DNA of 64,000 bases from Macrostomum lignano. Lineage: Eukaryota. The position numbers were made by a program, and so were the translations under genes. The stretch covers positions 180,258 to 244,257 of the forward strand of contig NIVC01000909.1 in NCBI GenBank assembly GCA_002269645.1, in the 5' to 3' direction. Below are positions 13,688-63,146 of the stretch, in pieces (within the stretch, counting starts at the first letter, position 1; each line of letters begins with the position of its first letter). Under the pieces are notes generated by a model. It was not told the DNA's origin, searched no databases, and worked only from the letters and a program-made list of their open reading frames with translations.

Positions 13688-13688
13688 G
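13481..13688. repeat. (GACA)n microsatellite downstream of the mGluR stop
   Basis: Direct reading. Confidence 0.95.
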
Positions 13689-13943: not shown

Positions 13944-31171
<17,228 letters not shown>

Positions 31172-31817
31172 TCTGTTTAGCAGGGCGACGTAAAGCAGTC
31201 CTCGTTAAAAGAACAATTATGGTGGCGCTCTAGCAGACACTTCTAAAGCGGTAGATTACTTGTTGTCCCTCTCTCACCGTCTGTCGGTCTATCTGCCAAC
31301 TAGAAAGCTTTTTTAGAATTGAATTATTAACAATCCTGCGACAGGGAAACTGGCAATGCCTTGGTAAGCTATAAGCTAGCACGCTATTTGTTGCTTTTTT
31401 ATATGAGAAATTGTTGAGTTGCTTGAATAAGACGCATGCTAGTGGCTTCTGTGGGCTGTGGGCTCTGTACCCGGTTCCTTGATTGGCTCTCAGGCTCAAA
31501 TGGGACAGTTGTTGATTCTGTTGGATAGGGGCTCCATAGGGCTAGGTCTAGCTTTAATGTCGTATCATGTCTCATCATCTTTACCATGGGAGAAACTTAT
31601 TCATGCATGACAACTAGAGACCTTTTGAGTATGAATTTATAAACAAACTATATCACACACTGAACAAGGGTCACTAATGTAGTGTATTGGCCCGAGCCAT
31701 CAGCGATACAACAGCCTGAGTCTGTCTGTCACATTATTTTCAGCTTTGAAATGTACATCACATCATAAACTTTTGTTTGACGTTAAAAGCACGATCTTAG
31801 TAGTATAAACTCAATTT

Positions 31818-32335
31818 TGGTGTTACAGACACGATCAAATTGCTCTTACAGACACGATCACATTGGTGTTACAGACACGATCACATTGGTGTTACAGACA
31901 CGATCACATGGGTGTTACAGACACGAGCACATTGGTGTTACAGACACGATCACATTGGTGTTACAGACACGATCACATTGGTGTTACAGACACGATCACA
32001 TTGGTGTTACAGACACGATCACATGGGTGTTACAGACACGATCACATGGGTGTTACAGACACGATCACATTAGTGTTACAGACACGATCACATTGGTGTT
32101 ACAGACACGATCACATTGGTGTTACAGACACGATCACATGGGTGTTACAGACACGATCACATGGGTGTTACAGACACGATCACATTGGTGTTACAGACAC
32201 GATCACATGGGTGTTACAGACACGATCACATGGGTGTTACAGACACGATCACATTAGTGTTACAGACAGGATCATGTTGGTGTTACAGACACGAATTTTA
32301 TGAAAAAACATTTTCTTTGGTGTTACAGACACAAT
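31818..32335. repeat. 23-bp minisatellite GGTGTTACAGACACGATCACATT
   Basis: Period 23. Confidence 0.95.
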
Positions 32336-32949
32336 CTTGGTGTTTCAAAATGCATACTCATACTTGCGTGACAGTTTCGTCCCACATTTTCTAAAAAATT
32401 TCTAAGCTAATAACAGCCACCTTCACCTGTAACTCAACTTCTGATTGCTAAAAAAATTATCGACGATAAAAATAGCTGGACGAAGCAGAGGAACGAACGG
32501 AAGGGTCGTTAGTATTCGCATGTATAGATGCTGCCAATAATTCAATATTTAAGGCTTATGTGGCAGTCAGAGAGCTGTGCAGAAACCTACAGCTACTCGT
32601 AGTTAGTCAAAGTAAGGCAAGCAAGACCATGGAATAAAACGTAATAGAACGTTTGGTTTTAGAAATCAATTTTACTCTAAGTCGTGTAATCGCATTTTTT
32701 ATCATAAATTTTATTCAAAAAACGATACGAAAATGGAATATGAGGTACAACACTTCGTGAATAAATATAAATGATAACAGTCGAAGGGTAACAAGGTAAG
32801 TAAATTTTAGTGATTAATTTTTAGTATATGGATTTTTAGTTACGTTTTATATACAGAATAGGAGCAAACTTTTTAGTAGCTATTACGAACTTTATTTAAT
32901 GTACACTTGGTTAGAAAAAACTTACTGAAACTTGCATGTGTTTTTACAG

Positions 32950-33340
32950 AACAGGTGGATTGACTACAAAGGGGGTGAGTTGACTTCAGAACAGGTTAAT
33001 TGACTTCAGAACAGATGAATTCACTTTAGAACAGGTGGATTGACTTTAGAACAGGTTAATTGACTTCACAACAAGTGGATTGACTTCAGAACAGGTGGAT
33101 TGACTTCAGAACAGGAGGATTGACTTCAGAACAGGAGGATTGACTTCAGAACAGGTGGATTGACTTCAGAACAGGTGGGTTGACTTCAGAACAAGTGGAT
33201 TGACTTCAGAACAGGTTGATTGACTTCACAACAAGTGGATTGACTTCAGAAAAGGAAGATTGACTTAAGAACGGGTGAGTTGAATTTTGGATTGACTTCA
33301 GAAAAAGTCGATTGACTTAAGAACGGGTGGGTTGACTTCC
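32950..33340. repeat. 20-bp minisatellite TTGACTTCAGAACAGGTGGA
   Basis: Period 20; ends about 40 bp after the aminergic GPCR stop codon. Confidence 0.92.
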
Positions 33341-33382
33341 TTGATGTATGAATTTGCCTTCTTTTAAACAGGTCTCCCAGTC

Positions 33383-36300
33383 TCATACAAACGACTCTTC
33401 GTAAACAAAGTAGCACACGGGATTGGCAATGGGCTCCGTGGCGCTGTCCTGATTCGCCTGACATTCAATCAGATCGTCCGTCTGCGTTGCTCCGTCCGCG
33501 TATTCAACCACAGCGCTGGTCTTGCTGCTCGCTGGCGGGCTGATGTTGAACCCGACGCCACTGGCTCCGCCGCCGCCACTGCCTCCACCTGTGCCGCCAC
33601 CTGGACTGGAGCCGCTGTACAGATGCTCTAGACCGAAGCCGCTGCTCTGACTGATGACACTTTGCGACGGGCTCGGCGTCCTCTCGTGACCGTTAGCCGA
33701 CGAGTTGCTGGAATCGGCGCTTGGTCGCTGCTTGTTGACTCGGCTCCACACGGACTCGACAGTTAGCGATTCGCGCTTTGCCGTCCGGCCGCATCTGGGA
33801 CTCGTCTGGCCGCTGACGTCGCCCTGCGAGCCCTGCGACACTTCGCTGCCCTCACGGTCAAAACCGCCCCCTGTGCTGCTTCCGCCGCCACCGCCGCCGC
33901 CACCGCTAGATGAAGCTGCGGCTTTGTCCAGACGGAAGCCGCTGGTGCGCGAGAAGCTGAAGCCGCTGCAGGAGGAGCCGCTCTCCCGGCGCGGACTCTC
34001 CTCAATGGTGTAGATGCTGAGCCGATGGTCCTGGCTGTTGTTGAAGTCAATCAGCGTGTCGTTGACCAGCAGGCTCGGTCGTCGGTGCGGCTCTGGACGA
34101 TTTCCGCTGACCGTGTTCCGGCGGGTCATGCCGCAGGCCGGATGGCTGGCCTGTCTGATGGGGTGGTGGAACAGCGCCGATTCTTTCATGCGCGAACTGA
34201 CGTGCGGCCCGGAATCGTCGAAAGCGTCCGAGTCGCTGATGTCAGTGACCGAGGACGTGGTGTCCTTGACTCCAGTAGACGACTGGTCTGTGGCGAGCCA
34301 GTCGCGGATCTTTTTTGACTTTCTAGTCCGACGTCGTTGCCAGAGCTTTACTTCGATTTTCTCGAATATCGCCGGTAGACTGTTGGTTCGAGATTTTCTC
34401 TTCTTAGCAGGCTGGTCCGGCTGTTGCTGCTGTTGGCTTTCTTGATCGTCGTCTTCGCAGATGATTGCGTCTGGATCTTCCTGATGATGACGCTGATGTT
34501 GCTGCTGATGATGGTGCTGATAGGCAGTTGAACTAGCCGAAGCCTGAGATGGATGGTACTGCTGCTGCTGCTGTTGCTGGTGCTTCTGCTGCTTCTGTAT
34601 TATCTTCAAACTGCTCTGCCTGCGATGCAAGGGCTGGTGATGATGATGGAAGTACACACCGGAGCTCAAGCCCGGATCTTTGCTGTCGATGCTGCAGCCT
34701 CCGCCGCCGCTGCCTCCGCCACCGCCGCCGAGAGTTGAAGCTGCTGCAGCTGCAGCCGCCGCTGCTGCCGATGTGAGATTCGATCCGCCCTGTCCACCGT
34801 CAACTCTATCGGTCATATCGGTGGATCTGAGAAGATAATCGGAGTTGAAAGGGACTTTGTGTTTAAAGTTTTCTGTTGAACTTTTGTTTAGAGGGTAGCT
34901 GATTGGAAAGTCAAATTATGGGTCATAGGGTACAGTACCTCGGTGAACTGTGTACGTAGCCCGATAGTTGTCTGATTAAAAACTATGTGTCTATACAATG
35001 AACGGGACAAAAATCCGATAAAATGTCAATTTTAGTCTTTTATATCGACAAAGTATCCACCTGGTATCCGTGGACGCGCACGACAGTCGCTGATCGGTGC
35101 GATTACAGGTGTACCCACTTGACGACGACAGAAACGAGAATCGCCGACTGCTCGATCGTCGACTACTCAGCCGGCGTCGCCAGGAAGCAGAGTGGCCGCC
35201 CGGCAGCAGCTCCTGGTAAGCCGATGCGCCGTCGTCCTCTGACGACTGGCGACTGTCGGCTCGCGACCGTTTTAGGGCGTCCATTGGGGACAGAAACGAG
35301 CCGGAGCGACTGGAAAAGAAGCTGGGCGAACGGCTGGAGCTGTAGGGCGATTCCGGCGGAGTACCCGATGAACCAGTGTAGTTGGTGTCCTGAAGTTCGG
35401 GGATTAGCAGTTGAAGTCATAAAACATCTAGTAAACATTGGACGGACGTGTAATGTAAGAGCCACATTGTCTGTTCATCACAATCATACTCGTACAAATT
35501 AGAAAGCAGTATAGTGCGCTACAAACTATTGGAAGTAGTTTTAACAAACTTATTGAAGTTAGTTTGCAATCCTCACCTGAATGCTTACTCGCAGGTGCCT
35601 CGACGCCTTAATAAGCTGAGTAACCGACTGCCGTCTGCTATTCCAATAATCCAACGACTTTCTCTTGCAATAATGCCTCGTTAACAACTTCCGAAATGCT
35701 CGTCGAAAGTCTTTGTTCAAGCACGGATAGATGATCGGATTCAGGAAGCTGTTGCAGTAGCCCAGCCACACGAAGTACTTCATCAGGGTGTCCGGCACTC
35801 GACAGGAGTAACAGACGCCGTGCAGCAGGTAAGTGAAGAAGAACGGACCCCAGCAGAAGACGAAAGCGCCAACAACAATGCCGAGAGTTTTAGCGGCTTT
35901 CGTGTGCGAGCCGAGACGTCTGAGGCGTTGAGCAACCGGATTCTTGGCCAGCAGCTTGGGCCGCCTGCCGCTCTGGCGTCGCTGCTGAGCGAGGGCGGCT
36001 GCGTGCGACGACGACGCAATCGCGATGCTGTCTCCTGCGGCGGGTGGATCGGATTAATTTTGAGTTAAATGCATTGTTGCAGCATAGTTTGAAGTATAGA
36101 CAACCATTTCTCTTTGTAGCACTCTCAAATACGAGCGTAGTGTGAACTTTGCTGATGAGACCGCTTTTGAACTCTCTGAGTTCAAATCAGAGACTTGATC
36201 GTTGGCTCCGACATTGAAATCTCTATTTCCTAAGCCAGGAATGTCTTGTCATCCGCAAATAATTTATAAAAGAAAATACTCAAAAATACGCCCAAATTAA

Positions 36301-37353
36301 AGCGGACTGGAACTTGGGTTTTCGTAACTGCCAGTCCTGTTAAAAATTGATAGTCAACATGAACTCACCTGAAGACACAGACCCCTTAGGCGAACTCTTA
36401 AAAGCCGGCACTCCGATGCCTGTGAAACTGGCGCAGGAGTCTCGCTGAAGGATTAACGCGGGCAAATTGTGAGGCCGATTTGGATGCTGTTGTTGTTGCT
36501 GCTGCTGCTGTTGTTGTTGCTTCAACAGAAGCGGCCTACCAGATGCTGATTGCAAACAGGGACTGTGATTTAGCGACATCTCAGACCCGCTATCGGCGTA
36601 CATATCGTTGTTCAAGTGGCTGAAACCAACCGACTGACCGCGCTGTATCTTCCTTCTCTGTTTGTTGGCTATTTTGAAAATCAGCCGATATAATACCAGC
36701 ATGATGCAGAGCGGTATGAAGAAACTACCGCAGGCTGAGAACACTACAAACGCGGATCGCTTAGCCAGTAGGCACTGATTAGATTGGCGCTTCTCAATGC
36801 CAACTCCAAACAGTGTGGGAGTGCTGATGGCCAGAGAGGCGGCCCAGATTCCCGTGATGGTGATGCAGGACCGCTTAGCAGTGGAGTACTGCGGATAGAG
36901 CATGGGCTGCGACAGTGCTCGGTACCTATCAAAACTGATGGCGCACAGATTGATAATTGACGCTGTACAACAGGTGATATCGGCGCTAATCCACATCCTG
37001 CAGAGGGCCTGTCCCAGGAGCCAACGGGTTGCGATTTCATACACGGCTGATATTGGCACAACCGCGATTCCAATGGCCAGGTCCGCCACTGCAAGGCTCA
37101 CCACGTAGTAGTTACTGGGCAGCCTTAAGCGCCTTTCGTAGAACACGGCTAGAACGACCAGACTGTTGCCAAACACTATGATGAAGATGAGCAGAACCAG
37201 CAGCACAGTCAGCGGCACCACTCTGCCGTGGGTGTCCCAGTCGGCTGTAGGAAAAGACGTCGGAGACACCGTTGCCAACGAACTACTGTTGCTAGCCAAA
37301 GTCCAATAGTCCGCCATGATTCTTACTGAGATCGAAGCCAAAAATCTTCTCAT
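33383..37353 (-). CDS. Aminergic class A GPCR (alpha1-adrenergic/octopamine-alpha-like), 4 exons: 37353-36369, 36034-35589, 35389-35061, 34826-33383 (1067 aa; 1055 aa from Met at 37317)
   Basis: TM1 GNSLV, TM2 SLAVAD, TM3 ADITCCTASI (Asp3.32) and DRY, TM5 FSACGSFFIP, TM6 KAAKTLGIVVGAFVFCWGPFF, TM7 WLGYCNSFLNPIIYPC. Exons 3-4 join in frame through GT-AG sites but their linkage is less certain than the 7TM exons. Confidence 0.9.
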
Positions 37354-37743
37354 TCATCTCATTCCCTCAAAAATGCTCTTTTTATATGAGCAGCAAAAGA
37401 GGCAAAAATTAATGAGATTCTTGAGCACTATTCACAGGGGTCATTCAACCGGCTGGAAGCTTTGATTGAATGCAATTTTTGTTCCATTGTTTGCATCAAA
37501 TGCTGCACGATTCAATCTACCATGAAGAGTTGCTGAGACAGACGCTAATCACGACCAACATGGCACATTGGGCATCATGCACCTGCTTCACCTCTAGACA
37601 GACGTTGGAGTGGACCAGATATGGGATTCGGATGAATTGGAACGCGAAGAAATTCGGATGGTGTATCGTCCTAATATGGTAAAGATATTTATGTTTGCAA
37701 TTACTCTGTCATTTTGTAAAGTGAGAATAGATATTGGAGCACA

Positions 37744-37810
<67 letters not shown>

Positions 37811-37825
37811 AAGACAGGCAGACAC
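37744..37825. repeat. (GACA)n microsatellite
   Basis: Direct reading. Confidence 0.95.
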
Positions 37826-38023
37826 TAAGACAGACACTAAGACATACCGGAAGATCTAGTTCGACGACTTTAAATAAAAAACAAGTAAAAAAATGCGGAT
37901 TTTGATAATTTTATTTGAGAATATTTTAGCTATCATAAAAGTGCAAAATCCAACGTTCCGATGCAGGCTTGCAATAGAACTAACAAAAACAGTTCCCATT
38001 GCAAGACAAAAATTAGAGTCAAG

Positions 38024-40756
38024 CTAAAGCTCGCCCCTGCTCCTCAGAACCATCTTCAGCAGCACCAGGTGCAGCCGTGGGTCCTCCGTGAGCTCCGGAT
38101 GAAAGCTGCAGGCCAGGATTCGATCCTGGGCCACCGCAACGGGATAAGAGTTGACCGTGGCGAGTACGCGAACGGACTCTGGCTTGTCGATGCTGAGTAT
38201 TTTTGGCGCTCGAATGAACACTCCAGGAAAATATTCTGCAGAATCGGTTAATTGGGTATTGATTTAAATTTAGAAGCATACCGGTATTCGCTTAAGTTAA
38301 CTGATGTTTATTGTGATATACGAGCTTATGTCCCATATTTAGATTACGAATTAAGGAGTCAGGCGCCAGATAAGGAACTGAGCTGAGGTGCCATAAGGCG
38401 CCAGACGAAGAAGTGAGGCGCCAGATGAGAAATTTAAGACGCCAGATGAAGAATTAGGGCGCCAGATGAGGAAGTGAGGCCCCATATGAAGTGAGGCGCC
38501 AGATGAGAAATTAAGGCGCCAGATGAGGAAGTGAGGCGCCAGATGAGGAATTAAGGCGCCAGATGTGAACTTGAGGCGCCAGATGTGGAATTGAGGCGCC
38601 AGATTAAGAATTAGGGCGCCAGATGAGGAAGTGAGGCGCTAGATGAGAAAGTGAGGCGCCACATGAGGGATTGAGGCGCCACATGAGGAATTGAGGCGCC
38701 AGATGAGGAATTAAGGCGCCAGATGAAGAAGTGAGGCGCCAGATAAGGAAGTGAGGCGCCAGATGAGGAATTGAGGCGCCAGATAAAGAATTAATCTAAT
38801 TTGCTATTTGAAACCGCTCCATACTCTCACCATTACAGTCGGAAATGTCCTCAACAGGTTTGAGTTCGATTTGACACTCAAAACTTTCTCTTTGCCTTCC
38901 ATAAAAGTTTCGGTCGGTTGTGACTGCCAGTCCTTGGATCTGTAAGCGAGAGTTCAGCATTTAGTGTTGCATTTTAATTGGAAAAAAATAACTATGAATA
39001 AACTGATATCAGATTGTATTTGCACCCATAGGTAGTTGGCTATGCCTAATTTAACCTTTCTTGCCCCAACGCGCTTGTATCCAAATTGTAATGCGATAAT
39101 TAATGCAATTCTTTAGTTAGTTGGATAAACACGTTTTCGGTTAGCCGTTTCGTCAGGTAGCACCAGCGCGAGGCACCTGTGCATTCTTAATTACATTCTT
39201 ACTTAGTTGATAAGGTTGTAGTGTCAGCCCCAGTTAAACAGTTCTATAATCGGGTCGGCAGATCTCTTTGATGTTTTATAAAACTAGATTGACTTTCAAA
39301 TCTACACAGTGTAGCTATTTTACATATACTTGAACAGAAGTTTCCGAGAGACTTTTATTCCTGCAACGTGTCTCCACATGGGTTTAGATTAAATTAATAA
39401 TAATGAGAAAACCAATGTGGAAAATTTCGTCAAATGGTAAAAAGTAGTCATGAGCGTAATTTCAAATTTAAATTGAAGTAAATACTTTAGACTGATACTA
39501 GTGTAAAAAATTAAGAGGAAAAAGCATAATTAAGTAAGTTGTAATGAATATTTTTTGCAATCAGATGATCAAAATAATGCAACACGGTTCCCCCAAAGAC
39601 TACTCAAGTTGGACGGGTAACCTCGTTTCTTGGAAAATTTTAGGAGGCAGGTTTTCCGAAAAAAATTACGGATAGGAGATTTTCATTTCTTTAGCACAAA
39701 CTTGTTATTGCTTTTTATAGGAGGCAGATCCAGTGCTCATCGTAAGTACAGTCCTTGGATTCCCCCAGGTATTTGAATATACGTGATTTTTCTTAGAAAC
39801 ACTTCACTTTAAAACAACAGGTACTCGTACAGTTACTTTCCGATACTGACCTGTCTTAACAAGGCATCATTCATCAAATTTATGATTTAAAAATATTTAT
39901 TAAAATCCAACTTTCAAAGCATGCACACAGTTACTTTCCGAAATGACGAATAACTGACGAAAAGGTTTTCGATGAAATGACCGTCCACCTTTCGCTGACC
40001 CCTTGAGCAAGGATTGAGAAAGCCTTTGTCGTCAAAGAATTCGAACCAAAATTACTCTTACCAAAGTCTGACCGCCAGTTTTCATATCGACCACTCGATC
40101 TGACAGAGCAATGAGGCCGGCACAGATGCCCCAGACAACCGCTCTGGGGTTGGTCTCTGCAGTTCAGTGCAGGTAGCATACATGGATGTCAGTGAAGCTT
40201 ACATGTAGCTTGTTACTCTTTTAAAAAACTGATCTGAGTTCTTTTCTACGTATAGAGTGGAAATTTTTTCTGCTGTTTCAAAACAGTGGAAATTATGGAC
40301 ATGTCTATGCTAAGAAATGTTTCTGAAATCTGTACCTGAGACTCGTCAAAGCCTAAAGACGTGACTGAGAGTAATAATAGTACAGCGCCCAACTCTAGAG
40401 CTAAGCTAGGTAAATTCCTATATTTTTGCGCTACTAAAATTATTTGCAACCTTGCCCATAGCATTTAAAGTACACTTGCCGCTGAACCAGACTTTGTATG
40501 CATCAAGCAGTCCATTTTGTTGCATAAACTTTGCCACTGTGGTGCTCTCTCCGCCCGGGATGATGAGCGCGTCAAGGTCCTCAGTGAGCTGGTCGCCCCT
40601 GCGGACTTCGATTGCTTCAACTGAGTAGCAATCCTTCGAGTTCTGCTTCTTCTGCCGTTGCTCTTGCTGAAGCTGTTCAACAGCCGACTCCAGCAGATTC
40701 CTGTGCTCAATGAATGCACCTTGAATTGCTAGCAATCCGATCTTTAGTTGAGGCAT
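38024..40756 (-). CDS. PDX2: PLP synthase glutaminase subunit (PDX2/SNO/PdxT), 4 exons: 40756-40480, 40156-40062, 38939-38831, 38235-38024 (230 aa)
   Basis: IGLLAIQGAFIEH, LIIPGGESTT, VWGICAG (catalytic Cys), DRNFYGRQRESF, GVFIRAP, SFHPEL (catalytic His and Glu). Frame is open across all junctions if intron 1 uses a GC donor. Confidence 0.95.
38356..38790. repeat. About 20-bp minisatellite GAGGCGCCAGATGAGGAAGT/TT in PDX2 intron 3
   Basis: Direct reading. Confidence 0.92.
39593..39745 (+). mobile_element. Diverged arm of the fold-back/MITE family at 62449-63146
   Basis: Shares GGACGGG..AACCTCGTTTCTT.GAAAATTTT and ATAGGAGGCAGATCCAGTGCTCATC with 62470-62605. Confidence 0.7.
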
Positions 40757-41425
40757 GGCTCCGCGTTCTCCGAAAACTCTGCTCAGATGTTTGCTCTTCG
40801 GGTTCTGTCGGATGGAAAAGTTTCTCTCACTTTCTCACGATTAAAATTTAAGAAGCAGACTTTGTGAGATTGGCAGGTTAAGTCAACACGCGGTCCTCCG
40901 TCGGAATTCTTGGGACCTGTGGCTGGCTAACTTTCCTGTCCTCTCAGCTGGCTGGGGCTGGGCGATTTGTCTGCGTGTTGTGCACCGCTCGGTACAGAAG
41001 GCTAATAACTGTTCACTCCCGGTGAAATTCTCTGCCTCTGCGGAACGCATATTACAGACAACCTCAGCTCCCTCAATTTTTTCTATTATTTGCTCGCTAG
41101 TTCGTTAGCACTCGCACCCAGCACAGTAGCCAGGTGTAAAGATAGGCTGCATTTAGTTGCAGAGTTTCCCACGTTTTCTCTCGGTGGGGGAGAGGGCAGC
41201 CCTGTTTGTACAGTGCGAAAGTTTGCTCAGCCCCTTGACATTTGCAGACCCAATGAGCTGCGAGACAGGCCAGAAACGCTAAAACTTTTGCGCTGATGCA
41301 CGGCTAGTCTTTAAAGAGGCGGCACATGCGCTAGGCGAGAGTCGCTGCTACTGCATTCGATATTCGTTTCGTGTCGTTAGTTTAGACTTCACCTTTATCA
41401 TCAGCTTCACCTTATTCCCGGAACA
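40757..41425. promoter_or_regulatory. Putative bidirectional promoter/5'UTR region between PDX2 and PDX1
   Basis: 669 bp between divergent ATGs, free of repeats; inferred from geometry, no core elements assigned. Confidence 0.6.
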
Positions 41426-42904
41426 ATGACCAGCAACGGCGATTCAGTGATTGGCACCTACACGGTAAAGACTGGCCTTGCCAAGATGACCAAAGGAGGA
41501 CTCGTCATGGATGTTGTAAATGCGGAGCAGGCAAAGATTGCTGAGGAAGCGGGGGTAAGATGGTAGTGCAGTATTTATAAAAGATTTCATATGGTTTTAG
41601 CAAATCTATGGTCGACTAATTTCTATCCACCGTTACGTTGCAGGCGTGCGCAGTGATGGCTCTGGAGCGAGTGCCGGCTGACATTCGCAAGCAGGGCGGC
41701 GTCGCTCGAATGACGGATCCAAAGCTGATCAAAGAGATCATGAGCGCCGTCACAATTCCGGTGATGGCCAAAGCCAGAATTGGCCACTTTGCTGAGGCGC
41801 AGATTCTGCAAGCTATCGGAGTTGACATGATCGACGAGTCGGAGGGTTAGTTGCGTCATATGACCTTATCCTGTACATCCCTGTAGCAAATAGGCGTTAG
41901 GCAAAGAAGCAAAAATAAATTCAAAGGGCCGACACGGAGCGTGTGCATGGAACTTTATCGGCGTAAATCTTACGAAAAGCCTCACGCCATATTTCGATCT
42001 GAACCATTATCCAAATCCACCACTAATCGAGTCACCACTTTTAACCGTTGAAAAAAATGTGATCCATCGTCACAGTTCTAACACCAGCCGATCCAGAGAA
42101 CCACATTGACAAGCACAGTTTCAAGATCCCGTTCGTCTGCGGCTGTCGGAATCTCGGCGAAGCGCTGCGTCGCATCGCGGAGGGCGCAGCCATGATGCGC
42201 ACCAAAGGCGAGGCCGGTACCGGCAACGTCATCGAGGCGGTGCGTCACGCTAGGGCGTTGAATCGGGAGATGCGCGCGGCTAAAGTGATGGACGACGACG
42301 AACTGTACTCATATGCTAAGCAGCTGCAGGTGCGCGGAATTTGGTTCTTGTGACTGGAGGCGAACTAACTCTATGCAACAAGGGGCAAAGATTGATGCTG
42401 GAGTAATCTCTGCGCAATCCCTTGGGAACTCTTTGGGATAAGTCTCTGATTAATCCCTAAGCAATCTCTGAAGAATATCTAAAGAAGCTTTTGAACAATA
42501 TCTATATGATTTCTAGTAGCGCAATATGTATTTCGTAAATCTCATCAACCTATATTGGACTACTATTTCAACCCCTCAAGGTGCCTCACGGCCTACTCAA
42601 AGAAGTGAAGCGTCAGGGCCGCCTGCCCGTAGTGAATTTCGCCGCCGGCGGTCTGGCCACCCCGGCCGACGTGTCGATGCTGATGCAACTCGGCGTGGAC
42701 GGTGTGTTCGTCGGCTCTGGCATCTTCAAGAGCGCCAATCCGCAGAAGCGCGCCGAGGCTATGGTGCAGGCGGTGACGCACTACAGAGATCCGGAGTTTC
42801 TGGCGCGAGTTAGCGAAGACCTGGGCGAAGCCATGATCGGCATCGACTGCGACGAGCTGATCAAAGGTCAGCTGTGGGCCGGCCGCGAGAGCCAGCGCAA
42901 CTAG
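41426..42904 (+). CDS. PDX1: PLP synthase subunit (PDX1/SNZ/PdxS), 4 exons: 41426-41554, 41644-41845, 42076-42329, 42581-42904 (302 aa)
   Basis: [33 protein letters not shown] (K81 equivalent), [35 protein letters not shown] (K149 equivalent), [27 protein letters not shown]; GT-AG introns, intact frame. Confidence 0.98.
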
Positions 42905-43809
42905 GCCATGCTTACGGAGTGGCGAATTGTTGGAACTCCATCTTGTTTTTCCTTTGTTACTTTCGTAGCGGAAGTTTCCTACGGTTTACCCATTCATTAC
43001 TCATTTTTTCTTTCGTATAGTTGAAGTCGCTTTTATAGTTCTGAAATTAATGCCCATGCAGATAAGACCTTTTTGTAGACCGATTCGGGCAATATCAGAT
43101 AAACTTGCAGTAACTGATTATACAGAAACATTATCTACAATAAACTATCCCATCCCCGTGAAAGATTCTCATTTGGTATCAATAGAAGGTCAAGGCGTTT
43201 TACAGTAATAAACATTTAAAATACAAAAGCCGTCAAGTAAATGTTTTACTAGAGACTTTCATCTTTAAAAGTTGGCCTCTACATTTCTTTTTTACAGTTA
43301 TTTACTTTTGCATCACATCGACGTTCAACCGATATATGACGAATTTGCGCGACGTACAGGTATACATATACATGCGATGAAGTCATAATTTTTTATTGTC
43401 CAAGAAGCCAAGCTTTTCCTGCCGAGATTTGTCGGCGCGAAATAAGGTTTTCCAGGCAATGCTTTTTTACTGCAGCGCATTTTTCCACGCGACAGAGCTA
43501 GATTTTCTCTTGCCCCCCATTTGCTTAGTACAATACATCCGTAAGTCTTAATAAAAGAGATTTACCCGATCAAAACGTTTCGATGATAACTGCTGAATAT
43601 AAAAAGCATATTTTTGTAGGTTTTCATTTCTTTTTAGGGTTAGCTGGGGAACCGGGTACATGTACACATATTTCTCAATACACATACATTAGGATTGGGG
43701 TACACGTATAACAGATGTACAATCACATACAGAGGTGCATCTGTGAAAGATTAATTCATGCATCTGTAATGTTGCTTTGTCCCCTAAATCTCTTTTTTAA
43801 GACTTACGA

Positions 43810-46010
43810 GTACAAAGCATTGGTGGGGGGCAATGCGGGTGACGCCGCAAGAAAAAACAAAAACAAAGTACGCAGCCCCACATGCAATGTGACAAGGTCA
43901 CAGTTAGCTCGTAGAGCAGGGTGCGTCAGATGGCGCGCTGCAGAGCCTGAGAGCGGACGAAGTCCGCCCCGTTGGCAGTGTCGGGCGCCCCGGCGTCGCG
44001 TAGGAGGCAGTCGTATCGCGACGGGTTTGGGCCTGACCCTGCCTGAACGGGCCCTGCAAGGTGAGCAGCAGAACGTCCTGAATAGGTTGGGGCAGAAGCC
44101 CTCGGCCCGGATTACGTGACCCGCCAGTTGAAGTCGCCGCCGGCGCATGCTGATGGACGGGCGCTGCAGCTTGGCCCGATCGTGTAGGGCCTCGGTCCCG
44201 ACGCTCTCATCAGCTCGAAAGGCCGCACAGCCCTGAGTGCGTCGAGTCCAGCTGCCGCTCTAGCGTAGCCGTCAGCGTCCACATCTCGTCGTTGTTAGAG
44301 TAGGACGGTTTCGACCACCGCCTGCCACAGCCGAGCCCTCTGGCGGTCGGGCAGCGCTTCGGACTGGACGACAACCCGGATCGAACGGAAGACCGCCCAG
44401 GCAAGTCCTCTGCGCCGCCGGAGGTCTTCCTCCACGTGAGGCACCAGACCGCCGAGGTAGGTGAACCGCTGGCAGCGTGCGAGCCTGGTCGTCTGCCCGT
44501 CTGCACCGCGGCACGTCAGGTCCGCCGTGATGTCGTCCCTGTCAGCACCTCGGTCTTCAGAGTGTTGTCAACCAGACCGATTCTCGATGCCACCTCGACC
44601 AGCCTGTCGATCTGGTGCTGGGCGCCTTAAACGGACGAGGACAGGAGGGCGAGGTCGTCGGCGTAGCCAAGCACGCTCAGGCGACCGATACGTCTGCGCA
44701 GCAGGAAGCCGTCGTCAGCCGAGGGGAGTGCGGTCCGAAGCACCAAGTCCAGCAGCAGCACGAAGAGGAACGGCGCTAGCGTGTCGCCCTGCAAAACTCC
44801 TGATGAAGTATCGAACAGGTCAGACAGGCCGTCCGCCGTCACCACAGCAGCTCGAGTGTCGCGATACAGCGCCATGAAAGCGTCGATTAGCTGCTGGGGT
44901 ACCCGGTAGGCTCGAAGGACAAGGGAAGCGCGGCTCTCAACACCGATTCAAACGCCTTTTGAAAGTCAAAGAAGACAATGATCAGCGTAGACTGGCGGAT
45001 GCGCGCCTCCTCGATGACCCGGCGGAGTTCGAGGATCTGTGTCACTGTACCGCGTTGCGGCCGGAATCCGTTCTGCTCGTACCGCAGGTACGGGTCCAGC
45101 ACCGACTGCAGACGATCGAGCAGCAGCCTGTTGAAGAGCTTCGCGGCGCAGGACATCAGCGAGATCCCGCGGTGGTCTTCTTTCCGCGTTGTCCCTGCCT
45201 TCATCGGGATTGGCACGATGTGCACGACGGTCCACTCGGTAGGCGCGGGGGCGCCGGTGAGCACGCGGTTCATGACGCCTGTGACCTGGGAGGCCACACA
45301 GCGGATTGAGCCGCAGCGCTTCGACCGGAACTTCGTCGCGGCCGAGCGCCTTGCCGCCTGATGTTTTCCGAGCGAACAGCAACGTCCTCCGTGGTGACTG
45401 GGCTGGTGAAGAAGTCCTCCTCAGCTGGGAGCGGCGTGTCAAGAGAGAGCGCAAAACTGGCAGGAGCGGCAACGCGCGGGCGCGTTCACGATGCCGGGAA
45501 AGAAGTCGCGCAATTCATTCCTGCGCTCCTCTGGGGTGTCGCCGGCCAGATTCAGCGCCACGCGCTTTCTGCGCCCCGTCAGGGTCCGGACGGCCGTTCA
45601 CACTGCCCGCGGCTCTTCACGTCGGGGCCGGCTGCAGTGATGGACCGGAAGGCGTCGTCGACAGCGGCTTGCTGCCGCTCATCTGAGAAAGGCGTCTTCA
45701 GCGTCGCCCGTGGGCCGCCGGTTTCTGCGGAGTCGCTCGATGTTGAGCCGCGTCTGCTTGATGGTCGGGTCGCTCTGCCAGACAGGCAGCGATTTCTGCG
45801 CTGGCCGCATCAGCGGGCCCATCTGCTCCGCAGCGGCTCTAGCGGCGGTGCTGATGTCGGAATACTCCGCCACGCACTGGTCTCCAAGCGCGCCGACGAA
45901 GGCACCCGCGAATTGACGCTTGACGCGGGTCTCCGACAGAGCACGAGGCCGCTGCTTTGGCGGTCGTTATAGAGCTAGGCATGGTCGTGGAGCCGCAAGT
46001 CGCACAGAGC
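43810..46010 (-). mobile_element. Decayed, 5'-truncated RTE-like non-LTR retrotransposon (RT pseudogene)
   Basis: HRGISLMSCAAKLFNRLLL, QNGFRPQRGT, DFQKAF, GVLQGDTLAPFLF, YADD and C-terminal RRRLQLAGHV motifs, split by frameshifts and stops; boundaries approximate. Confidence 0.9.
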
Positions 46011-46990
46011 CACAGATACTAGAACTAGATCTATAGTATCTGTGGGTCTGACCGAAGAGCCAGCAGAGCCATTGTGTCGCAGTTGGTGACGCGGCGGCGG
46101 CGCTTGCGAGTGCGAACCAGCGCATGATCGAGTTGCGCCAGTCTTCCCCGGCGTTCCGCCCGCATGCGTTCCGTCGCCTTCTTTGACGAAAAAAATAAGC
46201 ATTATTGCGGGAAAATCTCTCAGCAGCAAAATTTCGGGGGGGGGGGAAACATCGGTGGGCAAATCTCCTGAGGGAAAATCCCGGATGGGCAATTCATCTG
46301 GGGGAAATAGTCGTGCTTCCGTGCAATAGGTTAATACAACAGAGATAGACGAGATGACAATGCGTTAAAAAGTTTTCACTTGTTAATTGTAAAAGTTAGA
46401 TTTAAAAAGTCCTGAAATAATGCGAGTTTTGTATTAAAAAATAACTTTCCTCAGAAAATTCTTGCAAAACATAATCGTAGCGCTAAAAGTAAAAAAATTT
46501 TTGTTTAAGTAGGTCGGCCTTGGTGGCAATTTTTTTAGTTTTGCAAATCAATGATGAAATATCAGTTTCATTGGACAATTGAACTAAAATTTAGTTACCT
46601 AATAGAAAATTTAATTAAATTTATTACGTTATCGACTGCAATCAGGCAATCAGTCAATCATATAATATAATTATCTTGGATTCATCCACCATATAAATAT
46701 CGTATTTAGCACATTTAAGAAGCACTTTACTTTAAGTTTTTCTGTTGTAGGAGAATTTGGTTACAATAGGAATAGATAGAACTTCACTCTACTATAGTCC
46801 TAGTTAGTTTTTTCTTGAGGCCGAGGTTGCCGCAGAGGTTTTGATTTGTTGCTTATACTGTCCTATCGGAAACAGAATCTATAGAAAGCCTATTAGGCCT
46901 AGACCCTACCAATTAACTGACAGACTGGTTTAGTTTAAAACATTAATTTAATTAAGTCTTTCCTTTCCTAAATCCATTTAGCTCAGTAAA

Positions 46991-60172
<13,182 letters not shown>

Positions 60173-60333: not shown

Positions 60334-60386
<53 letters not shown>

Positions 60387-60521
60387 CAGTGTCTATCTGC
60401 CTGCCTGTCTGACTGTCTCTCTGTCTGTATGTGTCTGTCTGTCTGTCTGACTGTCTCTCTGTCTGTATGTGTCTGTCTGTCTGTCTGTGTCTGTCTGTCT
60501 GTCTGTGTCTGTTTGTCTCAG

Positions 60522-60618
<97 letters not shown>
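60331..60618. repeat. (TCTG)n microsatellite downstream of the MAPKAPK stop
   Basis: Direct reading. Confidence 0.95.
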
Positions 60619-62448
60619 TTCCATATGACCATTTATCAATCACTATGAACCCCCACTTGCCCATTGTGTAACCTCGTCCTCTGTTAAGACATTAGTACCT
60701 AATTATGCAGGGTTTGCCAATATTCATTAGTCAGCAGTTGGTACATTCTTTCTCATGTTTTTCTAATTTTGTTAATTTCGTAATGTTTTTACTCTATATA
60801 CTACTATATTATAGCTAGCACTAGGAATACGCTCGTAGAAATAAATTCTAGAAATAATATTTTAATCTAAAACAATATATAGATAATTAAGCACAGTTAC
60901 TAACCAATTTCTAAATAATGTTTTTTTCTTGTGCACTTTCTTACAGTTTAGTGCCTAAGATATCTATTCATTTGTTTTTTTACAGTGCTCTTTGCTATTT
61001 TGTTTCTGCATATTTTGTTATAATTAGTTCGTTGTATTTTCCCCCATTTTTGTACCCCATTTTTAAATTAGCTAAAATTTCACACAATTTAGCTAATGGA
61101 GAATTTGTTTCAATGACGCATAACTATTTTGTTAGTTTAGTTGGTTTAAGGCGGCTTTTTCGGGTTGGAAAACGTATTAATAATATCGAAATTCATTGGC
61201 ATGTGGCTAGATAAAATTAGATTTATTTGTTCTCCTGTAGCTATTACTATTCCGTAGTATAATTGCATGATAAAACCACCGCTTGTATCATTGTACATGC
61301 TGTCGTATAGTTGATACTAAACGACTCAACTATTTAGGCAATATAGCTTATTTTGTAGTCAGATTATCTCTCTGTATCGACTGCTATTCTTGTTATCAGT
61401 TTTTGTATGCACGAAGATAGACAGTTCGTTTCTGTTTCTTTGCACGCCTCTCTGCTCAGTTAATTATGTGAATTTCTATCATTGCCACTATAAATTTATA
61501 TACATATTTTTGGGACTACATCGCTTTCTTGTTTGTTAACTGTTTTTGCTGTTTATAGCTAGGCCAACTCTTGGGCTTGCGCCTTAACTATTGTAGAGTT
61601 AGTACCGTATTTTCAAATACAATTTAATTTTGTTTAAATATACTGCTACTATTCTAGAAGAGAACTTAATTCGTAAACTTTTTCTCGTCCTAACGTGCCC
61701 CGTGTAAAAAAACAGTTGATTAAGATATGACTTTCATAAAAATTTATACTTTCTTTTTGAAGCAACATTCGTCTTCTCTGTCTACAGCTCACTGCATAGG
61801 GAAACAAATAACATAGGCTACTTGTTTAAGCCGGTTATTTTTGTTTTATATTCTCAAGTTTTACCATTTTGACTCCCGTTCTATAATAAACGGATATATA
61901 ATTAATTTGTCCTTTGTCTGCACATTCTTTCCAAAGACTTAAGTTAAAGGAGGTTTCTAAGTTTTGTGGAAAATTTTAGAAGACAGGTTTTTACGAAAAA
62001 AATACACTACGTACGTAGATAGGAAGTTTTCATTTTTCAGCACAAAAATTGTTATTGCCATGCCACCGATAAGACCCAAAGCTAATATTTGATAATAAAT
62101 TTAACACTTATAGCTCAATTGATATATGCATGTAGCTTTAGTTCAGAAGATAAGGATTCTATGTTAATGTTTTATTCCACGTACATTGCTGTACCTAGTT
62201 AAAAAGCATAAAAATGCATAGGCGCAGGCGGTTTATGAATCTATTTTGCCATCTCTGTGCTCATATTGTTTATACATACACTCATGCTCATACAGTCAGG
62301 GATCATAAAATAGAATTCATAAGCCCATGATCCGAGGCGTGCAAGCAATTTTTTAATCTTATATTTTGAAGATTTTATATCTTTAAATCAAATTGCTTTT
62401 CTACATAGATGTCAGACCTTCCTTATATCGTTCGCTTAGAAAGTTTAG

Positions 62449-63146
62449 CAAGGACGACTTAAGTAGAAGGACGGGAAACCTCGTTTCTTAGAAAATTTTT
62501 GAAGGCACTTTTTCCCGAAAAAATACACTACGGAGATAGGAAATTTTCATTTTTTCAGCACAAAAATTGCTATTACTTTTGATAGGAGGCAGATCCAGTG
62601 CTCATCTTTTGATATGTTGTGCCTTTTTTATTGCTCTATCGATATTTATAAAGCTTTTTGTTCAGAAAATTAGGATTATATGTCAATTTTTTATTCTACG
62701 TACATTTCCTGTATCTGAAAATCACAAAAATGCATGACACAGCTCCAATATTTGCTTTTATAAACCTGTTTTATCATCTCTGTTACGAATATTTGCTAAA
62801 CAGTCAGTTAAGAATGATAAAATAGACTTCTAAAACCAAAGAGCCGAGCCGTGGCATTCTAATGTATTTCAATCACAAGACACGTGAAAATATACGGAGA
62901 ATAAAAAATTTACATAGAATCCTAATTTTCTGAACTAAAAGCTTTATAAATATCGATAGAGCAATAAAAAAGGCACAAAATATCAAAAGATGAGCACTGG
63001 ATCTGCCTCCTATCAAAAGTAATAGCAATTTTTGTGCTGAAAAAATGAAAATTTCCTATCTCCGTAGTGTATTTTTTCGGGAAAAAGTGCCTTCAAAACT
63101 TTTCTAAGAAACGAGGTTTTCCGTCCTTCTACTTAAGTCGTCCTTG
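62449..63146. mobile_element. Fold-back/MITE element, 698 bp, with about 250-bp inverted arms
   Basis: 62449-62702 is the reverse complement of 62891-63146 (end CAAGGACGACTTAAGTAGAAGGACGG); no coding capacity; a more diverged arm lies at about 61930-62140. Confidence 0.85.

What the first reader, a model, noticed from the sequence alone, without database searches (positions are those of the whole stretch)
38024..42904. Complete de novo vitamin B6 (PLP) synthase, PDX1 plus PDX2, embedded in a bilaterian-looking animal genome
Seen: both subunits are intact and spliced. PDX1 keeps the MDV Asp and both catalytic Lys motifs ([17 protein letters not shown]); PDX2 keeps the Cys-His-Glu triad (GICAG, FHPEL). 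They sit between neural GPCR genes and MAPKAPK2 and carry the same intronic minisatellites and MITEs as their neighbours, which argues against contamination. Established: most animals are B6 auxotrophs lacking PDX1/PDX2, with scattered exceptions such as sponges and cyst nematodes. Inference: this animal can make PLP from pentose phosphate, triose phosphate and glutamine.
Basis: partly seen in the sequence, partly recalled or inferred. Interest (0 to 1): 0.85.

Follow-up and report, generated by a model that had tools for sequence, protein, structure and literature searches.

The report
Flatworm vitamin B6 synthase gene pair
The window carries an intact, divergently transcribed PDX2-PDX1 gene pair for making vitamin B6 in the flatworm Macrostomum lignano, but both genes are already in public databases and many other invertebrates have the same pair, so it is real but not new.

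Summary
PDX1 (+ strand, 41426-42904, 4 exons, 302 aa) and PDX2 (- strand, 40756-38024, 4 exons, 230 aa) are intact. They lie head-to-head, 669 bp apart. Both score above the curated PdxS and PdxT equivalog cut-offs, and every catalytic residue checked is present.

The window is Macrostomum lignano assembly GCA_002269645.1, contig NIVC01000909.1 (22.7 kb at 100% identity). Both proteins match GenBank entries exactly (PAA74998.1, PAA74999.1). UniProt already names them PLP synthase and glutaminase.

The genes are neither contamination nor a recent transfer:
- All three PDX1 introns sit at positions and phases shared with annelid, tunicate or sponge PDX1.
- The head-to-head pair recurs in Capitella, Owenia, Haliotis and the tunicate Clavelina.
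- PDX1 falls in an animal clade (90% bootstrap).
- Three intact copies exist in this recently duplicated genome.
- An mRNA-like contig from a related species gives dN/dS of 0.018.

Annotated PDX1 or PDX2 proteins exist in at least five bilaterian phyla. Verdict: correct identification, already known, low novelty. Enzyme activity is untested.

The parts
41426..42904 (+). PDX1 (PdxS/SNZ) gene, the PLP synthase lyase subunit. Four exons: 41426-41554, 41644-41845, 42076-42329, 42581-42904. Three GT-AG introns. Product 302 aa.
   Evidence: The exact splice model reproduces the protein. Pfam SOR_SNZ 6.8e-109. NCBIfam PdxS equivalog 497 bits against cut-off 395. 445 bits to Arabidopsis PDX1.3, 5lnr. 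Exact match to GenBank PAA74998.1 and PAA70401.1.
38024..40756 (-). PDX2 (PdxT/SNO) gene, the glutaminase subunit. Four exons: 40756-40480, 40156-40062, 38939-38831, 38235-38024. Intron 1 is GC-AG; introns 2 and 3 are GT-AG. Product 230 aa.
   Evidence: Exact splice model. The same intron structure appears in the deposited model of the paralogous locus. Pfam SNO 4.5e-46. TIGR03800 PdxT 165 bits against cut-off 105.55. The AlphaFold2 model (pLDDT 90.4) matches PdxT in 2nv2 with TM 0.93-0.94 and rmsd 1.6-1.7 A. Exact match to PAA74999.1 and PAA87169.1.
40757..41425 (.). 669-bp ATG-to-ATG spacer between the divergent genes. Inferred to be a shared bidirectional promoter.
   Evidence: The sequence shows directly that the two start codons face away from each other. 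The spacer is 97.0-98.8% identical among the three M. lignano loci. The same head-to-head layout occurs in Capitella, Owenia, Clavelina and Haliotis. Promoter activity itself is inferred, not tested.
41510..41512 (+). PDX1 Asp29 codon, equivalent to B. subtilis PdxS Asp24.
   Evidence: using the +5 residue offset taken from the 2nv2_A alignment.
41770..41772 (+). PDX1 Lys86 codon, equivalent to B. subtilis Lys81, which forms the Schiff base with ribose 5-phosphate.
42204..42206 (+). PDX1 Lys154 codon, equivalent to B. subtilis Lys149, the second catalytic lysine.
40122..40124 (-). PDX2 Cys104 codon, the nucleophile of the Cys-His-Glu triad.
   Evidence: The column is invariant across 38 PDX2/PdxT sequences.
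38093..38101 (-). PDX2 His206-Pro-Glu208 codons, the remainder of the catalytic triad.
   Evidence: The columns are invariant.
38396..38792 (.). 20-bp-period minisatellite of about 20 copies inside PDX2 intron 3.
   Evidence: Tandem Repeats Finder. The unit is not found elsewhere in the window. Copy number differs among the three M. lignano loci.
39594..39741 (.). Solo copy of a dispersed element of about 150 bp inside PDX2 intron 2.
   Evidence: 78-82% identical copies lie at 62449-62606, 62989-63146 and 61961-62058. Two of these copies lie at the outer ends of the two 259-nt arms of a foldback element.

Best explanation
[quoted passage not shown] The animal lineage inherited them vertically and kept them under purifying selection.

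Mechanism, inferred from the family:
1. PDX2 hydrolyses glutamine with its Cys104-His206-Glu208 triad.
2. The ammonia passes into the (beta/alpha)8 barrel of PDX1.
3. Lys86 of PDX1 forms an imine with ribose 5-phosphate.
4. Lys154 takes over the chromophoric intermediate, glyceraldehyde 3-phosphate is added, and PLP is released.
5. In characterised homologues the active enzyme is a 12 + 12 complex.

The two genes are transcribed divergently from a 669-bp spacer. This arrangement is shared with annelids, a gastropod and a tunicate, and would keep the two subunits co-expressed.

Shown here: gene structure, family membership, catalytic residues, the PDX2 fold, provenance, animal-type introns, synteny, selective constraint, and a transcript in a related species.

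Inferred: enzyme activity, complex assembly, use of a shared promoter, and B6 prototrophy of the worm.
For: Family membership:
- Full-length matches above curated cut-offs.
- 445 bits to Arabidopsis PDX1.3 over residues 11-295.
- The PDX2 model has pLDDT 90.4 and matches PdxT in PLP synthase complexes at TM 0.92-0.94.

Catalytic residues:
- Fourteen PdxS functional positions are conserved at a constant +5 offset. The PDX2 triad, the GGEST motif and the RNxxGRQ motif are all present.

Provenance:
- Window 28024-50756 is 100% identical to M. lignano NIVC01000909.1.
- Both proteins exactly match GenBank and UniRef entries.

Vertical descent:
- PDX1 introns fall at alignment column 55 phase 0, column 122 phase 1 and column 207 phase 0. 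These are shared with Capitella/Owenia/Clavelina, with those three plus the sponge Amphimedon, and with Clavelina, respectively.
- PDX2 intron 2 shares column and phase with Haliotis. Introns 1 and 3 coincide with, or lie within 1-2 residues of, phase-1 introns in annelids.
- Head-to-head adjacency occurs in four other bilaterians.
- In a neighbour-joining tree, PDX1 sits in a sponge + bilaterian clade with 90% bootstrap support.

Constraint and expression:
- Three intact loci exist in the assembly.
- PDX1 shows 0 non-synonymous and 2 synonymous differences against the paralogous locus, where non-coding DNA is about 3% diverged. PDX2 dN/dS is 0.30.
- Five uninterrupted contigs of 1.25-1.36 kb from SRR28338163-67 carry a 97.7%-identical PDX1 ORF. 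They align to the window as four blocks whose ends fall at, or within a few bases of, the exon boundaries. dN/dS is 0.018 with dS about 1.06.

Same genome as the neighbours:
- GC3 is 0.72 for PDX1 and 0.58 for PDX2, against 0.61-0.69 for neighbouring genes.
- Dispersed and simple repeats are shared with the rest of the window.
Against: - No enzymatic or genetic test exists for this or, as far as I found, for any bilaterian PDX1/PDX2.
- The transcript evidence comes from an unidentified related species, not from M. lignano reads. I infer that the contigs are mRNA only because they lack introns.
- The PDX2 copies differ at 6 residues, with dN/dS of 0.30, so constraint on PDX2 is looser than on PDX1.
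- The PDX1 tree is a neighbour-joining tree built from a very conserved protein (71-78% identity even to bacteria) with a small, hit-biased taxon sample.
- Within the animal clade, the bilaterian grouping has only 37% bootstrap support.
Confidence: 0.9

Rival explanations
1. The pair reached the flatworm lineage by a recent horizontal transfer from a bacterium or fungus, as is reported for the vitamin B6 genes of cyst nematodes. Introns would have been gained afterwards.
For: - PDX1 is so conserved that bacterial homologues reach 72-74% identity, close to the 74-78% seen for animal homologues.
- Outside Macrostomum, the best named PDX2 hits include chytrid fungi at 42-44%.
- Cyst-nematode B6 genes are cited as transfers in the literature.
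Against: - All three PDX1 introns are at positions and phases shared with annelid, tunicate or sponge genes. The PDX2 introns match those of spiralians.
- The head-to-head arrangement is shared with annelids, a gastropod and a tunicate.
- PDX1 lies in an animal clade with 90% bootstrap support.
- GC3 is like that of neighbouring genes.
Confidence: 0.04
2. The genes are assembly contamination or a chimeric join of microbial DNA with flatworm DNA.
For: None beyond the prior expectation that 'animals lack PDX1/PDX2'.
Against: - Both genes have spliceosomal introns, one with a canonical GC-AG donor.
- The locus occurs three times in the assembly, on contigs of 248, 392 and 758 kb. The copies are collinear over more than 20 kb at 91-98% identity, including the GPCR side and the retroelement side.
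- A dispersed repeat in a PDX2 intron recurs 22 kb away in the window.
- A related species expresses an orthologue that is 97.7% identical in protein.
Confidence: 0.01
3. The genes are real animal genes but no longer make PLP. They could be decaying relics, or a pseudoenzyme or regulator like plant PDX1.2, or retained for some other role.
For: - Activity has never been measured.
- Most well-studied animals live without the pathway.
- PDX2 shows relaxed constraint between paralogous copies (dN/dS 0.30).
Against: - The reading frames are intact in all three copies.
- Every catalytic residue examined is conserved. By contrast, the non-catalytic PDX1.2 scores 130 bits lower than catalytic PDX1.3 against this protein.
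- PDX1 dN/dS is 0.018 across a synonymous distance of about 1.
- Retention of both partners side by side is what a working two-subunit enzyme predicts.
Confidence: 0.05

Closest known systems
Bacillus subtilis PdxS/PdxT (YaaD/YaaE) PLP synthase complex (PDB 2nv2) and other bacterial PdxST enzymes
   Same: - Same two-subunit family. PDX1 matches 2nv2_A over residues 9-292 (402 bits).
- Asp24, Lys81, Lys149 and eleven further positions are conserved at a +5 offset.
- The PDX2 model superposes on 2nv2 PdxT at TM 0.93-0.94 and rmsd 1.6-1.7 A, with the Cys-His-Glu triad in place.
   Different: - These are eukaryotic genes with introns.
- They are arranged divergently rather than as a pdxS-pdxT operon.
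- PDX2 carries an extra segment of about 20 residues (around 24-44) that extends the first helix.
- PDX2 is only 32-37% identical to the bacterial subunits.
Arabidopsis thaliana PDX1.3 (PDB 5lnr)
   Same: It is the best solved-structure match to PDX1: 445 bits, alignment without gaps across residues 11-287, and identical catalytic motifs.
   Different: - It falls outside the animal clade in the tree.
- From my own knowledge, not tested here: the plant PDX1 genes are not known to be paired head-to-head with PDX2.
Sponge SNZERR/SNOERR (Suberites domuncula; Seack et al. 2001) and the 'SNZERR-like' proteins annotated in other sponges
   Same: - These are animal PDX1 orthologues at 75-77% identity (Amphimedon, Halisarca, Dysidea).
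- They fall in the same animal clade.
- Amphimedon shares the phase-1 intron at alignment column 122.
- This is the case that reviews cite as the animal exception.
   Different: - In Amphimedon, PDX2 is not within 10 kb of PDX1.
- The Suberites paper is not held in the library, so I could not check its gene arrangement.
Annotated bilaterian PDX1/PDX2 pairs: Capitella teleta, Owenia fusiformis, Haliotis cracherodii and Clavelina lepadiformis
   Same: - Same divergent PDX2-PDX1 adjacency. The coding-start gaps are 427, 780 and 1067 bp in Capitella, Owenia and Clavelina, and 669 bp here. Haliotis is also adjacent.
- Intron positions are shared.
- PDX1 identity is 76-80%.
   Different: - Macrostomum PDX1 keeps only 3 introns, against 7-8 in these species.
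- Its PDX2 is markedly diverged; the mollusc PDX2 proteins are 36-40% identical to it.
- The locus is present three times in this recently duplicated genome.
Cyst-nematode (Heterodera, Globodera) vitamin B6 synthesis genes
   Same: This is another bilaterian lineage with SNZ/SNO-type genes.
   Different: Those genes are described in the literature as horizontally acquired. The flatworm genes carry animal-type introns and synteny and sit in the animal clade. I did not analyse nematode sequences here.

Membership tests
PdxS / PDX1 / SNZ (PLP synthase lyase subunit; Pfam PF01680, NCBIfam NF003215 and TIGR00343) | Full-length match to the family models above the curated cut-offs | tested here: met
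   PF01680 scores 362.9 bits (cut-off 27) over profile positions 2-207 of 207. NF003215 scores 496.9 bits (cut-off 395). TIGR00343 scores 474.7 bits (cut-off 438.45)..
PdxS / PDX1 / SNZ (PLP synthase lyase subunit; Pfam PF01680, NCBIfam NF003215 and TIGR00343) | Catalytic Asp and two catalytic Lys (B. subtilis D24, K81, K149) plus phosphate-site residues | tested here: met
   D29, K86 and K154 are present. So are D107, E110, H120, R142, R143, R152, G158, K192, G219, G240 and S241, all at a +5 offset. The B. subtilis residue numbers come from my own knowledge of the family.
PdxS / PDX1 / SNZ (PLP synthase lyase subunit; Pfam PF01680, NCBIfam NF003215 and TIGR00343) | (beta/alpha)8 barrel fold and assembly into a dodecamer | not tested
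   I predicted no structure for PDX1. The fold is inferred from the near-gapless 445-bit alignment to 5lnr. Oligomeric state cannot be tested with these tools.
PdxS / PDX1 / SNZ (PLP synthase lyase subunit; Pfam PF01680, NCBIfam NF003215 and TIGR00343) | Synthesis of PLP from ribose 5-phosphate, glyceraldehyde 3-phosphate and ammonia | not testable with these tools
   This needs an enzyme assay or a complementation experiment.
PdxT / PDX2 / SNO (class I glutamine amidotransferase subunit; Pfam PF01174, NCBIfam TIGR03800) | Full-length match to the family models above the curated cut-offs | tested here: met
   PF01174 scores 157.5 bits (cut-off 27) over profile positions 2-186 of 188. TIGR03800 scores 165.2 bits (cut-off 105.55). 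A second PdxT model, NF010050, scores 98.3 bits, below its cut-off of 181..
PdxT / PDX2 / SNO (class I glutamine amidotransferase subunit; Pfam PF01174, NCBIfam TIGR03800) | Cys-His-Glu catalytic triad and the GGEST oxyanion-region motif | tested here: met
   C104, H206, E208 and P67-GGEST-T72 are present. All are invariant columns in an alignment of 38 sequences.
PdxT / PDX2 / SNO (class I glutamine amidotransferase subunit; Pfam PF01174, NCBIfam TIGR03800) | PdxT-type fold | tested here: met
   The AlphaFold2 model has pLDDT 90.4 and pTM 0.90. The top 26 PDB matches are all PdxT/Pdx2 chains, the best at TM 0.94 and rmsd 1.6 A. HisH chains come next, at TM 0.73-0.79.
PdxT / PDX2 / SNO (class I glutamine amidotransferase subunit; Pfam PF01174, NCBIfam TIGR03800) | Co-occurrence with a PdxS partner | tested here: met
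   The partner gene lies 669 bp away on the opposite strand. The same pairing is found at the other two M. lignano loci.
Metazoan (vertically inherited) PDX1/PDX2 lineage, as opposed to horizontally acquired copies | Intron positions and phases shared with other animals | tested here: met
   For PDX1, 3 of 3 introns are shared, based on exact gene models. For PDX2, 1 of 3 is exact (Haliotis) and 2 of 3 lie within 0-2 residues of annelid introns of the same phase. The annelid models were built by similarity but reproduce the annotated protein lengths.
Metazoan (vertically inherited) PDX1/PDX2 lineage, as opposed to horizontally acquired copies | Conserved gene-order context with other animals | tested here: met
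   Divergent PDX2-PDX1 adjacency occurs in Capitella, Owenia, Clavelina and Haliotis. It is absent in Amphimedon and Capsaspora.
Metazoan (vertically inherited) PDX1/PDX2 lineage, as opposed to horizontally acquired copies | Phylogenetic placement within animals | tested here: met
   The neighbour-joining tree (100 bootstraps) recovers a sponge + bilaterian clade at 90%, which includes the window protein. Resolution inside that clade is poor, at 37%. No maximum-likelihood program was available.

The most novel reading that the evidence does not exclude
De novo vitamin B6 synthesis may be an ancestral animal trait that is still widely retained in aquatic bilaterians. Annotated PDX1 or PDX2 proteins turned up here in annelids, molluscs, copepods, a tunicate and a free-living flatworm. 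On this reading the trait was lost repeatedly, for example in vertebrates and insects.

The divergent PDX2-PDX1 pair, with its spacer of roughly 0.4-1 kb, would then be an ancient microsynteny block kept since at least the bilaterian ancestor.

The reviews I could read still say animals cannot make B6, apart from 'some sponges'. I found no paper on Macrostomum and vitamin B6. The pattern may therefore not have been described systematically. M. lignano has published transgenesis and RNAi tools, so it could be the bilaterian in which B6 prototrophy is tested genetically.
Probability: 0.3. Interest if true: 0.45.

Novelty: already known. Interest (0 to 1): 0.22.

Why it matters
For this window it matters little. 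The genes, their products and their automatic functional names are already public, and the enzyme family is among the best understood in vitamin metabolism.

The wider point is modest but real. The textbook statement that animals cannot synthesise vitamin B6 does not fit what is now in the genome databases. A free-living flatworm with genetic tools carries three intact, strongly constrained copies of the complete two-gene pathway.

That makes nutritional independence from dietary or microbial B6 directly testable in a bilaterian. It also gives a clean example of a two-gene metabolic unit held together as a divergent pair across phyla.

No named proteins from other flatworms appeared among the best 120 PDX2 hits. 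This hints that planarians and parasitic flatworms may lack PDX2.

Tried and rejected
I reached the same loci through cluster members instead.
- My first exon-chaining script, based on tblastn hits, missed short exons and failed for three of five genes. I replaced it with an exact splice search.
- My similarity-based spliced aligner, run with a cross-species query, introduced a spurious 33-nt intron and shifted some junctions. I therefore used it only for the annelid PDX2 genes, and accepted only models that reproduce the annotated product lengths of 228 and 240 aa. I did not build a full Clavelina PDX2 model.
- The Dreissena PDX2 protein was not on record for a contig look-up.
- The PDX1 homology search did not list the identical M. 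lignano protein. One search suggests a reason: its 90% cluster is represented by a 43-aa fragment.
- Several literature searches led nowhere:
  - 'Macrostomum' + 'vitamin B6' found 0 papers.
  - 'SNZERR' found 0 papers.
  - 'vitamin B6' + 'Pdx2' + 'Nematostella' found 0 papers.
  - Two annelid genome papers mention B6 only for symbionts or in a reference list.
  - A search that included 'PDX1' was swamped by the homeobox gene of the same name.
  - The Seack et al. 2001 sponge paper is not held.
- I considered bacterial contamination, recent horizontal transfer and a pseudogene or pseudoenzyme, and rejected each. The reasons are given under the rival explanations.
- I did not run the search of protein representatives. 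It returns no names or taxonomy, so it could not address the remaining question of distribution across animals.

Full report
**1. What is in the sequence**

Reading 37500-43500 and translating all frames shows two split genes facing away from each other.

PDX1 is on the + strand, with exons 41426-41554, 41644-41845, 42076-42329 and 42581-42904. All three introns are GT-AG. The 909-nt coding sequence gives a 302-aa protein. An exact-match splice search recovers the same model.

PDX2 is on the - strand, with exons 40756-40480, 40156-40062, 38939-38831 and 38235-38024, giving 230 aa. Its first intron has a GC donor in the classical G|gcaagt context. The other two introns are GT-AG.

The start codons are 669 bp apart (40757-41425). 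The finding's coordinates, 38024-42904, run exactly from the PDX2 stop to the PDX1 stop.

**2. Family assignment**

- PDX1 matches Pfam SOR_SNZ end to end (6.8e-109). It exceeds the curated cut-offs of both NCBIfam PdxS equivalog models: 497 bits against 395, and 475 against 438.
- The best solved relative of PDX1 is Arabidopsis PDX1.3, at 445 bits with a near-gapless alignment. The non-catalytic plant paralogue PDX1.2 scores about 130 bits lower.
- PDX2 matches Pfam SNO (4.5e-46) and the PdxT equivalog TIGR03800, at 165 bits against 105.55.
- An AlphaFold2 model of PDX2, built from a 38-sequence alignment, has mean pLDDT 90.4 and pTM 0.90.
- The 26 best PDB matches to that model are all PdxT/Pdx2 chains, the best at TM 0.94 and rmsd 1.6 A. 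HisH amidotransferases follow at lower scores.
- Eleven further PdxS positions line up at a constant +5 offset from B. subtilis numbering. The B. subtilis numbers come from my own knowledge of the family.
- The one visible peculiarity is an extra segment of about 20 residues in PDX2 (around 24-44), which the model places as an extension of the first helix.

**3. Whose genome this is**

The PDX2 homology search returned four Macrostomum lignano entries at 75-97% identity. Nothing else exceeded 44%.

An exact-sequence look-up then showed that both proteins, spliced as above, are already deposited:
- PDX1 equals PAA74998.1 and PAA70401.1. Its UniRef100 entry, A0A1I8HL75, is named 'pyridoxal 5'-phosphate synthase (glutamine hydrolyzing)'.
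- PDX2 equals PAA74999.1 and PAA87169.1. Its UniRef100 entry, A0A267GPE2, is named 'glutaminase'.

Fetching the contigs settled provenance. Window 28024-50756 is 100% identical, over 22,733 bases without a gap, to GCA_002269645.1 contig NIVC01000909.1.

The assembly holds two more copies of the locus, on NIVC01001239.1 and NIVC01000245.1. They are collinear with the window at 91-98% identity, and each has an intact head-to-head pair. [quoted passage not shown]

**4. Is it really part of the animal genome, and how did it get there?**

The neighbours are animal genes:
- An aminergic class A GPCR at 33383-37353, whose best solved relatives are alpha-1A adrenergic, D2 and 5-HT1 receptors.
- A class C receptor with ANF, NCD3G and 7tm_3 domains at 16698-31171.
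- A MAPKAPK2/3 exon at 57023-57328 (1.2e-40).

GC3 is 0.72 for PDX1 and 0.58 for PDX2, bracketing the 0.61-0.69 of the neighbouring exons.

PDX2 intron 2 holds a roughly 150-bp element with copies at 62-63 kb. (AGAC)n, found just beyond the PDX2 stop, is scattered over the whole window.

The strongest evidence for vertical descent comes from exact gene models of annotated PDX1 genes. The three window introns fall at alignment column 55 phase 0, column 122 phase 1 and column 207 phase 0:
- The first is shared with Capitella, Owenia and Clavelina.
- The second is shared with those three and the sponge Amphimedon.
- The third is shared with Clavelina.

Macrostomum has simply lost four or five of the 7-8 introns seen in the other bilaterians compared.

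For PDX2:
- Intron 2 has the same column and phase as the single Haliotis intron.
- Introns 1 and 3 coincide with, or lie within two residues of, phase-1 introns in the annelid genes.
- None is shared with the unicellular relative Capsaspora.

The divergent PDX2-PDX1 adjacency is also conserved. The coding-start gaps are 427 bp in Capitella, 780 bp in Owenia and 1067 bp in the tunicate Clavelina. The two genes are adjacent in Haliotis as well. They are not adjacent in Amphimedon or Capsaspora.

A neighbour-joining tree places the window PDX1 in a sponge + bilaterian clade with 90% bootstrap support. Resolution inside the clade is weak.

Together these results exclude contamination and make a recent horizontal transfer very unlikely.

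**5. Is it in use?**

All three copies are intact.

Against the NIVC01001239.1 copy, PDX1 has no amino-acid change and two synonymous changes. The surrounding non-coding DNA is about 3% diverged. PDX2 has six non-synonymous and six synonymous differences, for dN/dS of 0.30.

Five Logan contigs from runs SRR28338163-67 each carry an uninterrupted 909-nt ORF. The contigs are 1.25-1.36 kb long. The ORF is 97.7% identical in protein and about 85% identical in DNA to the window PDX1. The contigs align to the window in four blocks that end at, or within a few bases of, the exon boundaries.

I read these contigs as mRNA from a related species. That is an inference from the absence of introns, because I could not see the run metadata. 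Against them, dN/dS is 0.018 at a synonymous distance of about 1.06. This is the signature of a working enzyme.

I found no M. lignano transcript evidence with these tools, and nothing here tests activity.

**6. How it most likely works**

By homology with the characterised bacterial, plant and Plasmodium enzymes, this is the glutamine-dependent PLP synthase of the DXP-independent pathway:
1. The PDX2 triad releases ammonia from glutamine.
2. The ammonia enters the PDX1 barrel.
3. Lys86 binds ribose 5-phosphate as an imine.
4. Lys154 carries the later intermediate, glyceraldehyde 3-phosphate is condensed, and PLP is formed.

The shared 669-bp spacer is 97.0-98.8% identical among the three loci. 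It is inferred to act as a bidirectional promoter that keeps the two subunits co-expressed. That role was not tested.

**7. Comparison with what is known, and novelty**

Reviews state that animals cannot make vitamin B6, or that 'most animals' lack the genes, with 'some sponges' as the exception (PMC7954711, PMC6071262). Cyst-nematode genes are treated as horizontal acquisitions.

The databases say otherwise. Among the best PDX1 hits are annotated proteins from:
- Four annelids: Paralvinella, Owenia, Capitella and Dimorphilus.
- Two copepods: Tigriopus and Caligus.
- A tunicate: Clavelina.
- Three sponges: Amphimedon, Halisarca and Dysidea.

PDX2 hits include four molluscs.

The pair in this window is itself deposited and correctly named by automatic annotation. 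I found no paper linking Macrostomum with vitamin B6. The topic may therefore be undiscussed, but the feature is not new. I rate it as already known, with low interest.

The most novel reading left open is the general one. Wide ancestral retention of the pathway, and of the divergent gene pair, across aquatic bilaterians may not have been described systematically.

**8. Limits**

- The tree is neighbour-joining, built on a hit-biased sample of a very conserved protein.
- The annelid PDX2 models are similarity-based.
- The species behind the transcript contigs is unknown.
- Absence from other flatworms is suggested only by their absence from a capped hit list.
- Function rests entirely on homology and selective constraint.

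Noticed in passing
window 38024-42904; L001 7829-13012; L013 7866-13478: The M. lignano assembly holds three intact copies of the PDX2-PDX1 locus, on contigs of 392, 248 and 758 kb. The PDX2 gene is 2733, 3012 and 3478 bp long in the three copies. Counts of the intron-3 minisatellite core are 15, 15 and 44, which explains only part of the length differences. PDX1 is identical in two copies and differs by P197H in the third.
   Followed up: partly
window 62449-63146: A foldback element with 259-nt arms that are 97% complementary, separated by 180 nt. The outer 150 bp or so of each arm is homologous to a solo copy in PDX2 intron 2 (39594-39741). A partial copy lies at 61961-62058. It looks like a MITE-like or foldback transposon family.
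   Followed up: partly
window 43400-47800 (GC 64% at 44001-46000): A GC-rich block with long overlapping ORFs on both strands and a reverse-transcriptase fragment (RVT_1, 44887-45297, - strand). It lies between PDX1 and the kinase gene. It is present at 94-97% identity in the other two loci, so the insertion predates the duplication. The type of retroelement was not determined.
   Followed up: partly
window 33383-37353 (- strand); L014 12734-22733: The deposited gene calls for this contig list no gene across window 28024-38023. That stretch contains clear ORFs of an aminergic class A GPCR, with 7tm_1 at 3.2e-51 and 158 bits to the alpha-1A adrenergic receptor. A 477-aa ORF at 33383-34816 is rich in Gln, His and Gly and has no Pfam match; it might be the third intracellular loop. 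The stretch also holds the N-terminal exon of the class C receptor. These receptors appear to be unannotated there.
   Followed up: no
window 1-1350, 2400-2650, 10376-11755, 13450-13700, 30000-30643, 37744-37836, 59292-59723, 60334-60618: Very long tetranucleotide arrays, (AGAC)n/(GTCT)n and (TAGA)161, make up several percent of the window. They generate long spurious ORFs such as 'CLSVCLSV...' and 'DRQTDRQT...'.
   Followed up: no
window 14513-16621, 18355-19503, 23575-25012, 31817-32294, 32947-33339, 57352-58192: Many minisatellite arrays. Tandem Repeats Finder gave periods of 20-23 bp and about 20-40 copies for the three it covered (31817, 32947, 57352). The other three are seen only as repetitive ORFs. 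They lie within the class C receptor span, between that receptor and the class A GPCR, or just after the kinase exon. Each has a different unit, and they produce long repetitive ORFs on both strands. The PDX2 intron-3 array is of the same kind.
   Followed up: partly
window 40478-40479 (PDX2 intron 1 donor): A GC-AG intron with the G|gcaagt consensus. The deposited model at the paralogous locus L001 uses the same GC donor.
   Followed up: yes
L008-L012 (Logan contigs from SRR28338163-67): Intron-less contigs of 1.25-1.36 kb encoding a PDX1 that is 97.7% identical in protein and about 85% identical in DNA to the window gene. They are presumably transcripts of another Macrostomum-like species. 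No comparable PDX2 contig appeared in the searches.
   Followed up: partly
protein cluster 1: The 90%-identity cluster holding the 302-aa M. lignano PDX1 is represented by a 43-aa fragment from Logan/ENA. This probably explains why the PDX1 homology search listed no Macrostomum protein even though an identical one is in the collection.
   Followed up: no
L004 (Clavelina lepadiformis OX392445.1): In the tunicate, a rhodopsin-family GPCR gene lies next to PDX2, on the side away from PDX1. The window has the same relative position for its class A GPCR. This may be coincidence. I did not test whether the two receptors are orthologous.
   Followed up: no
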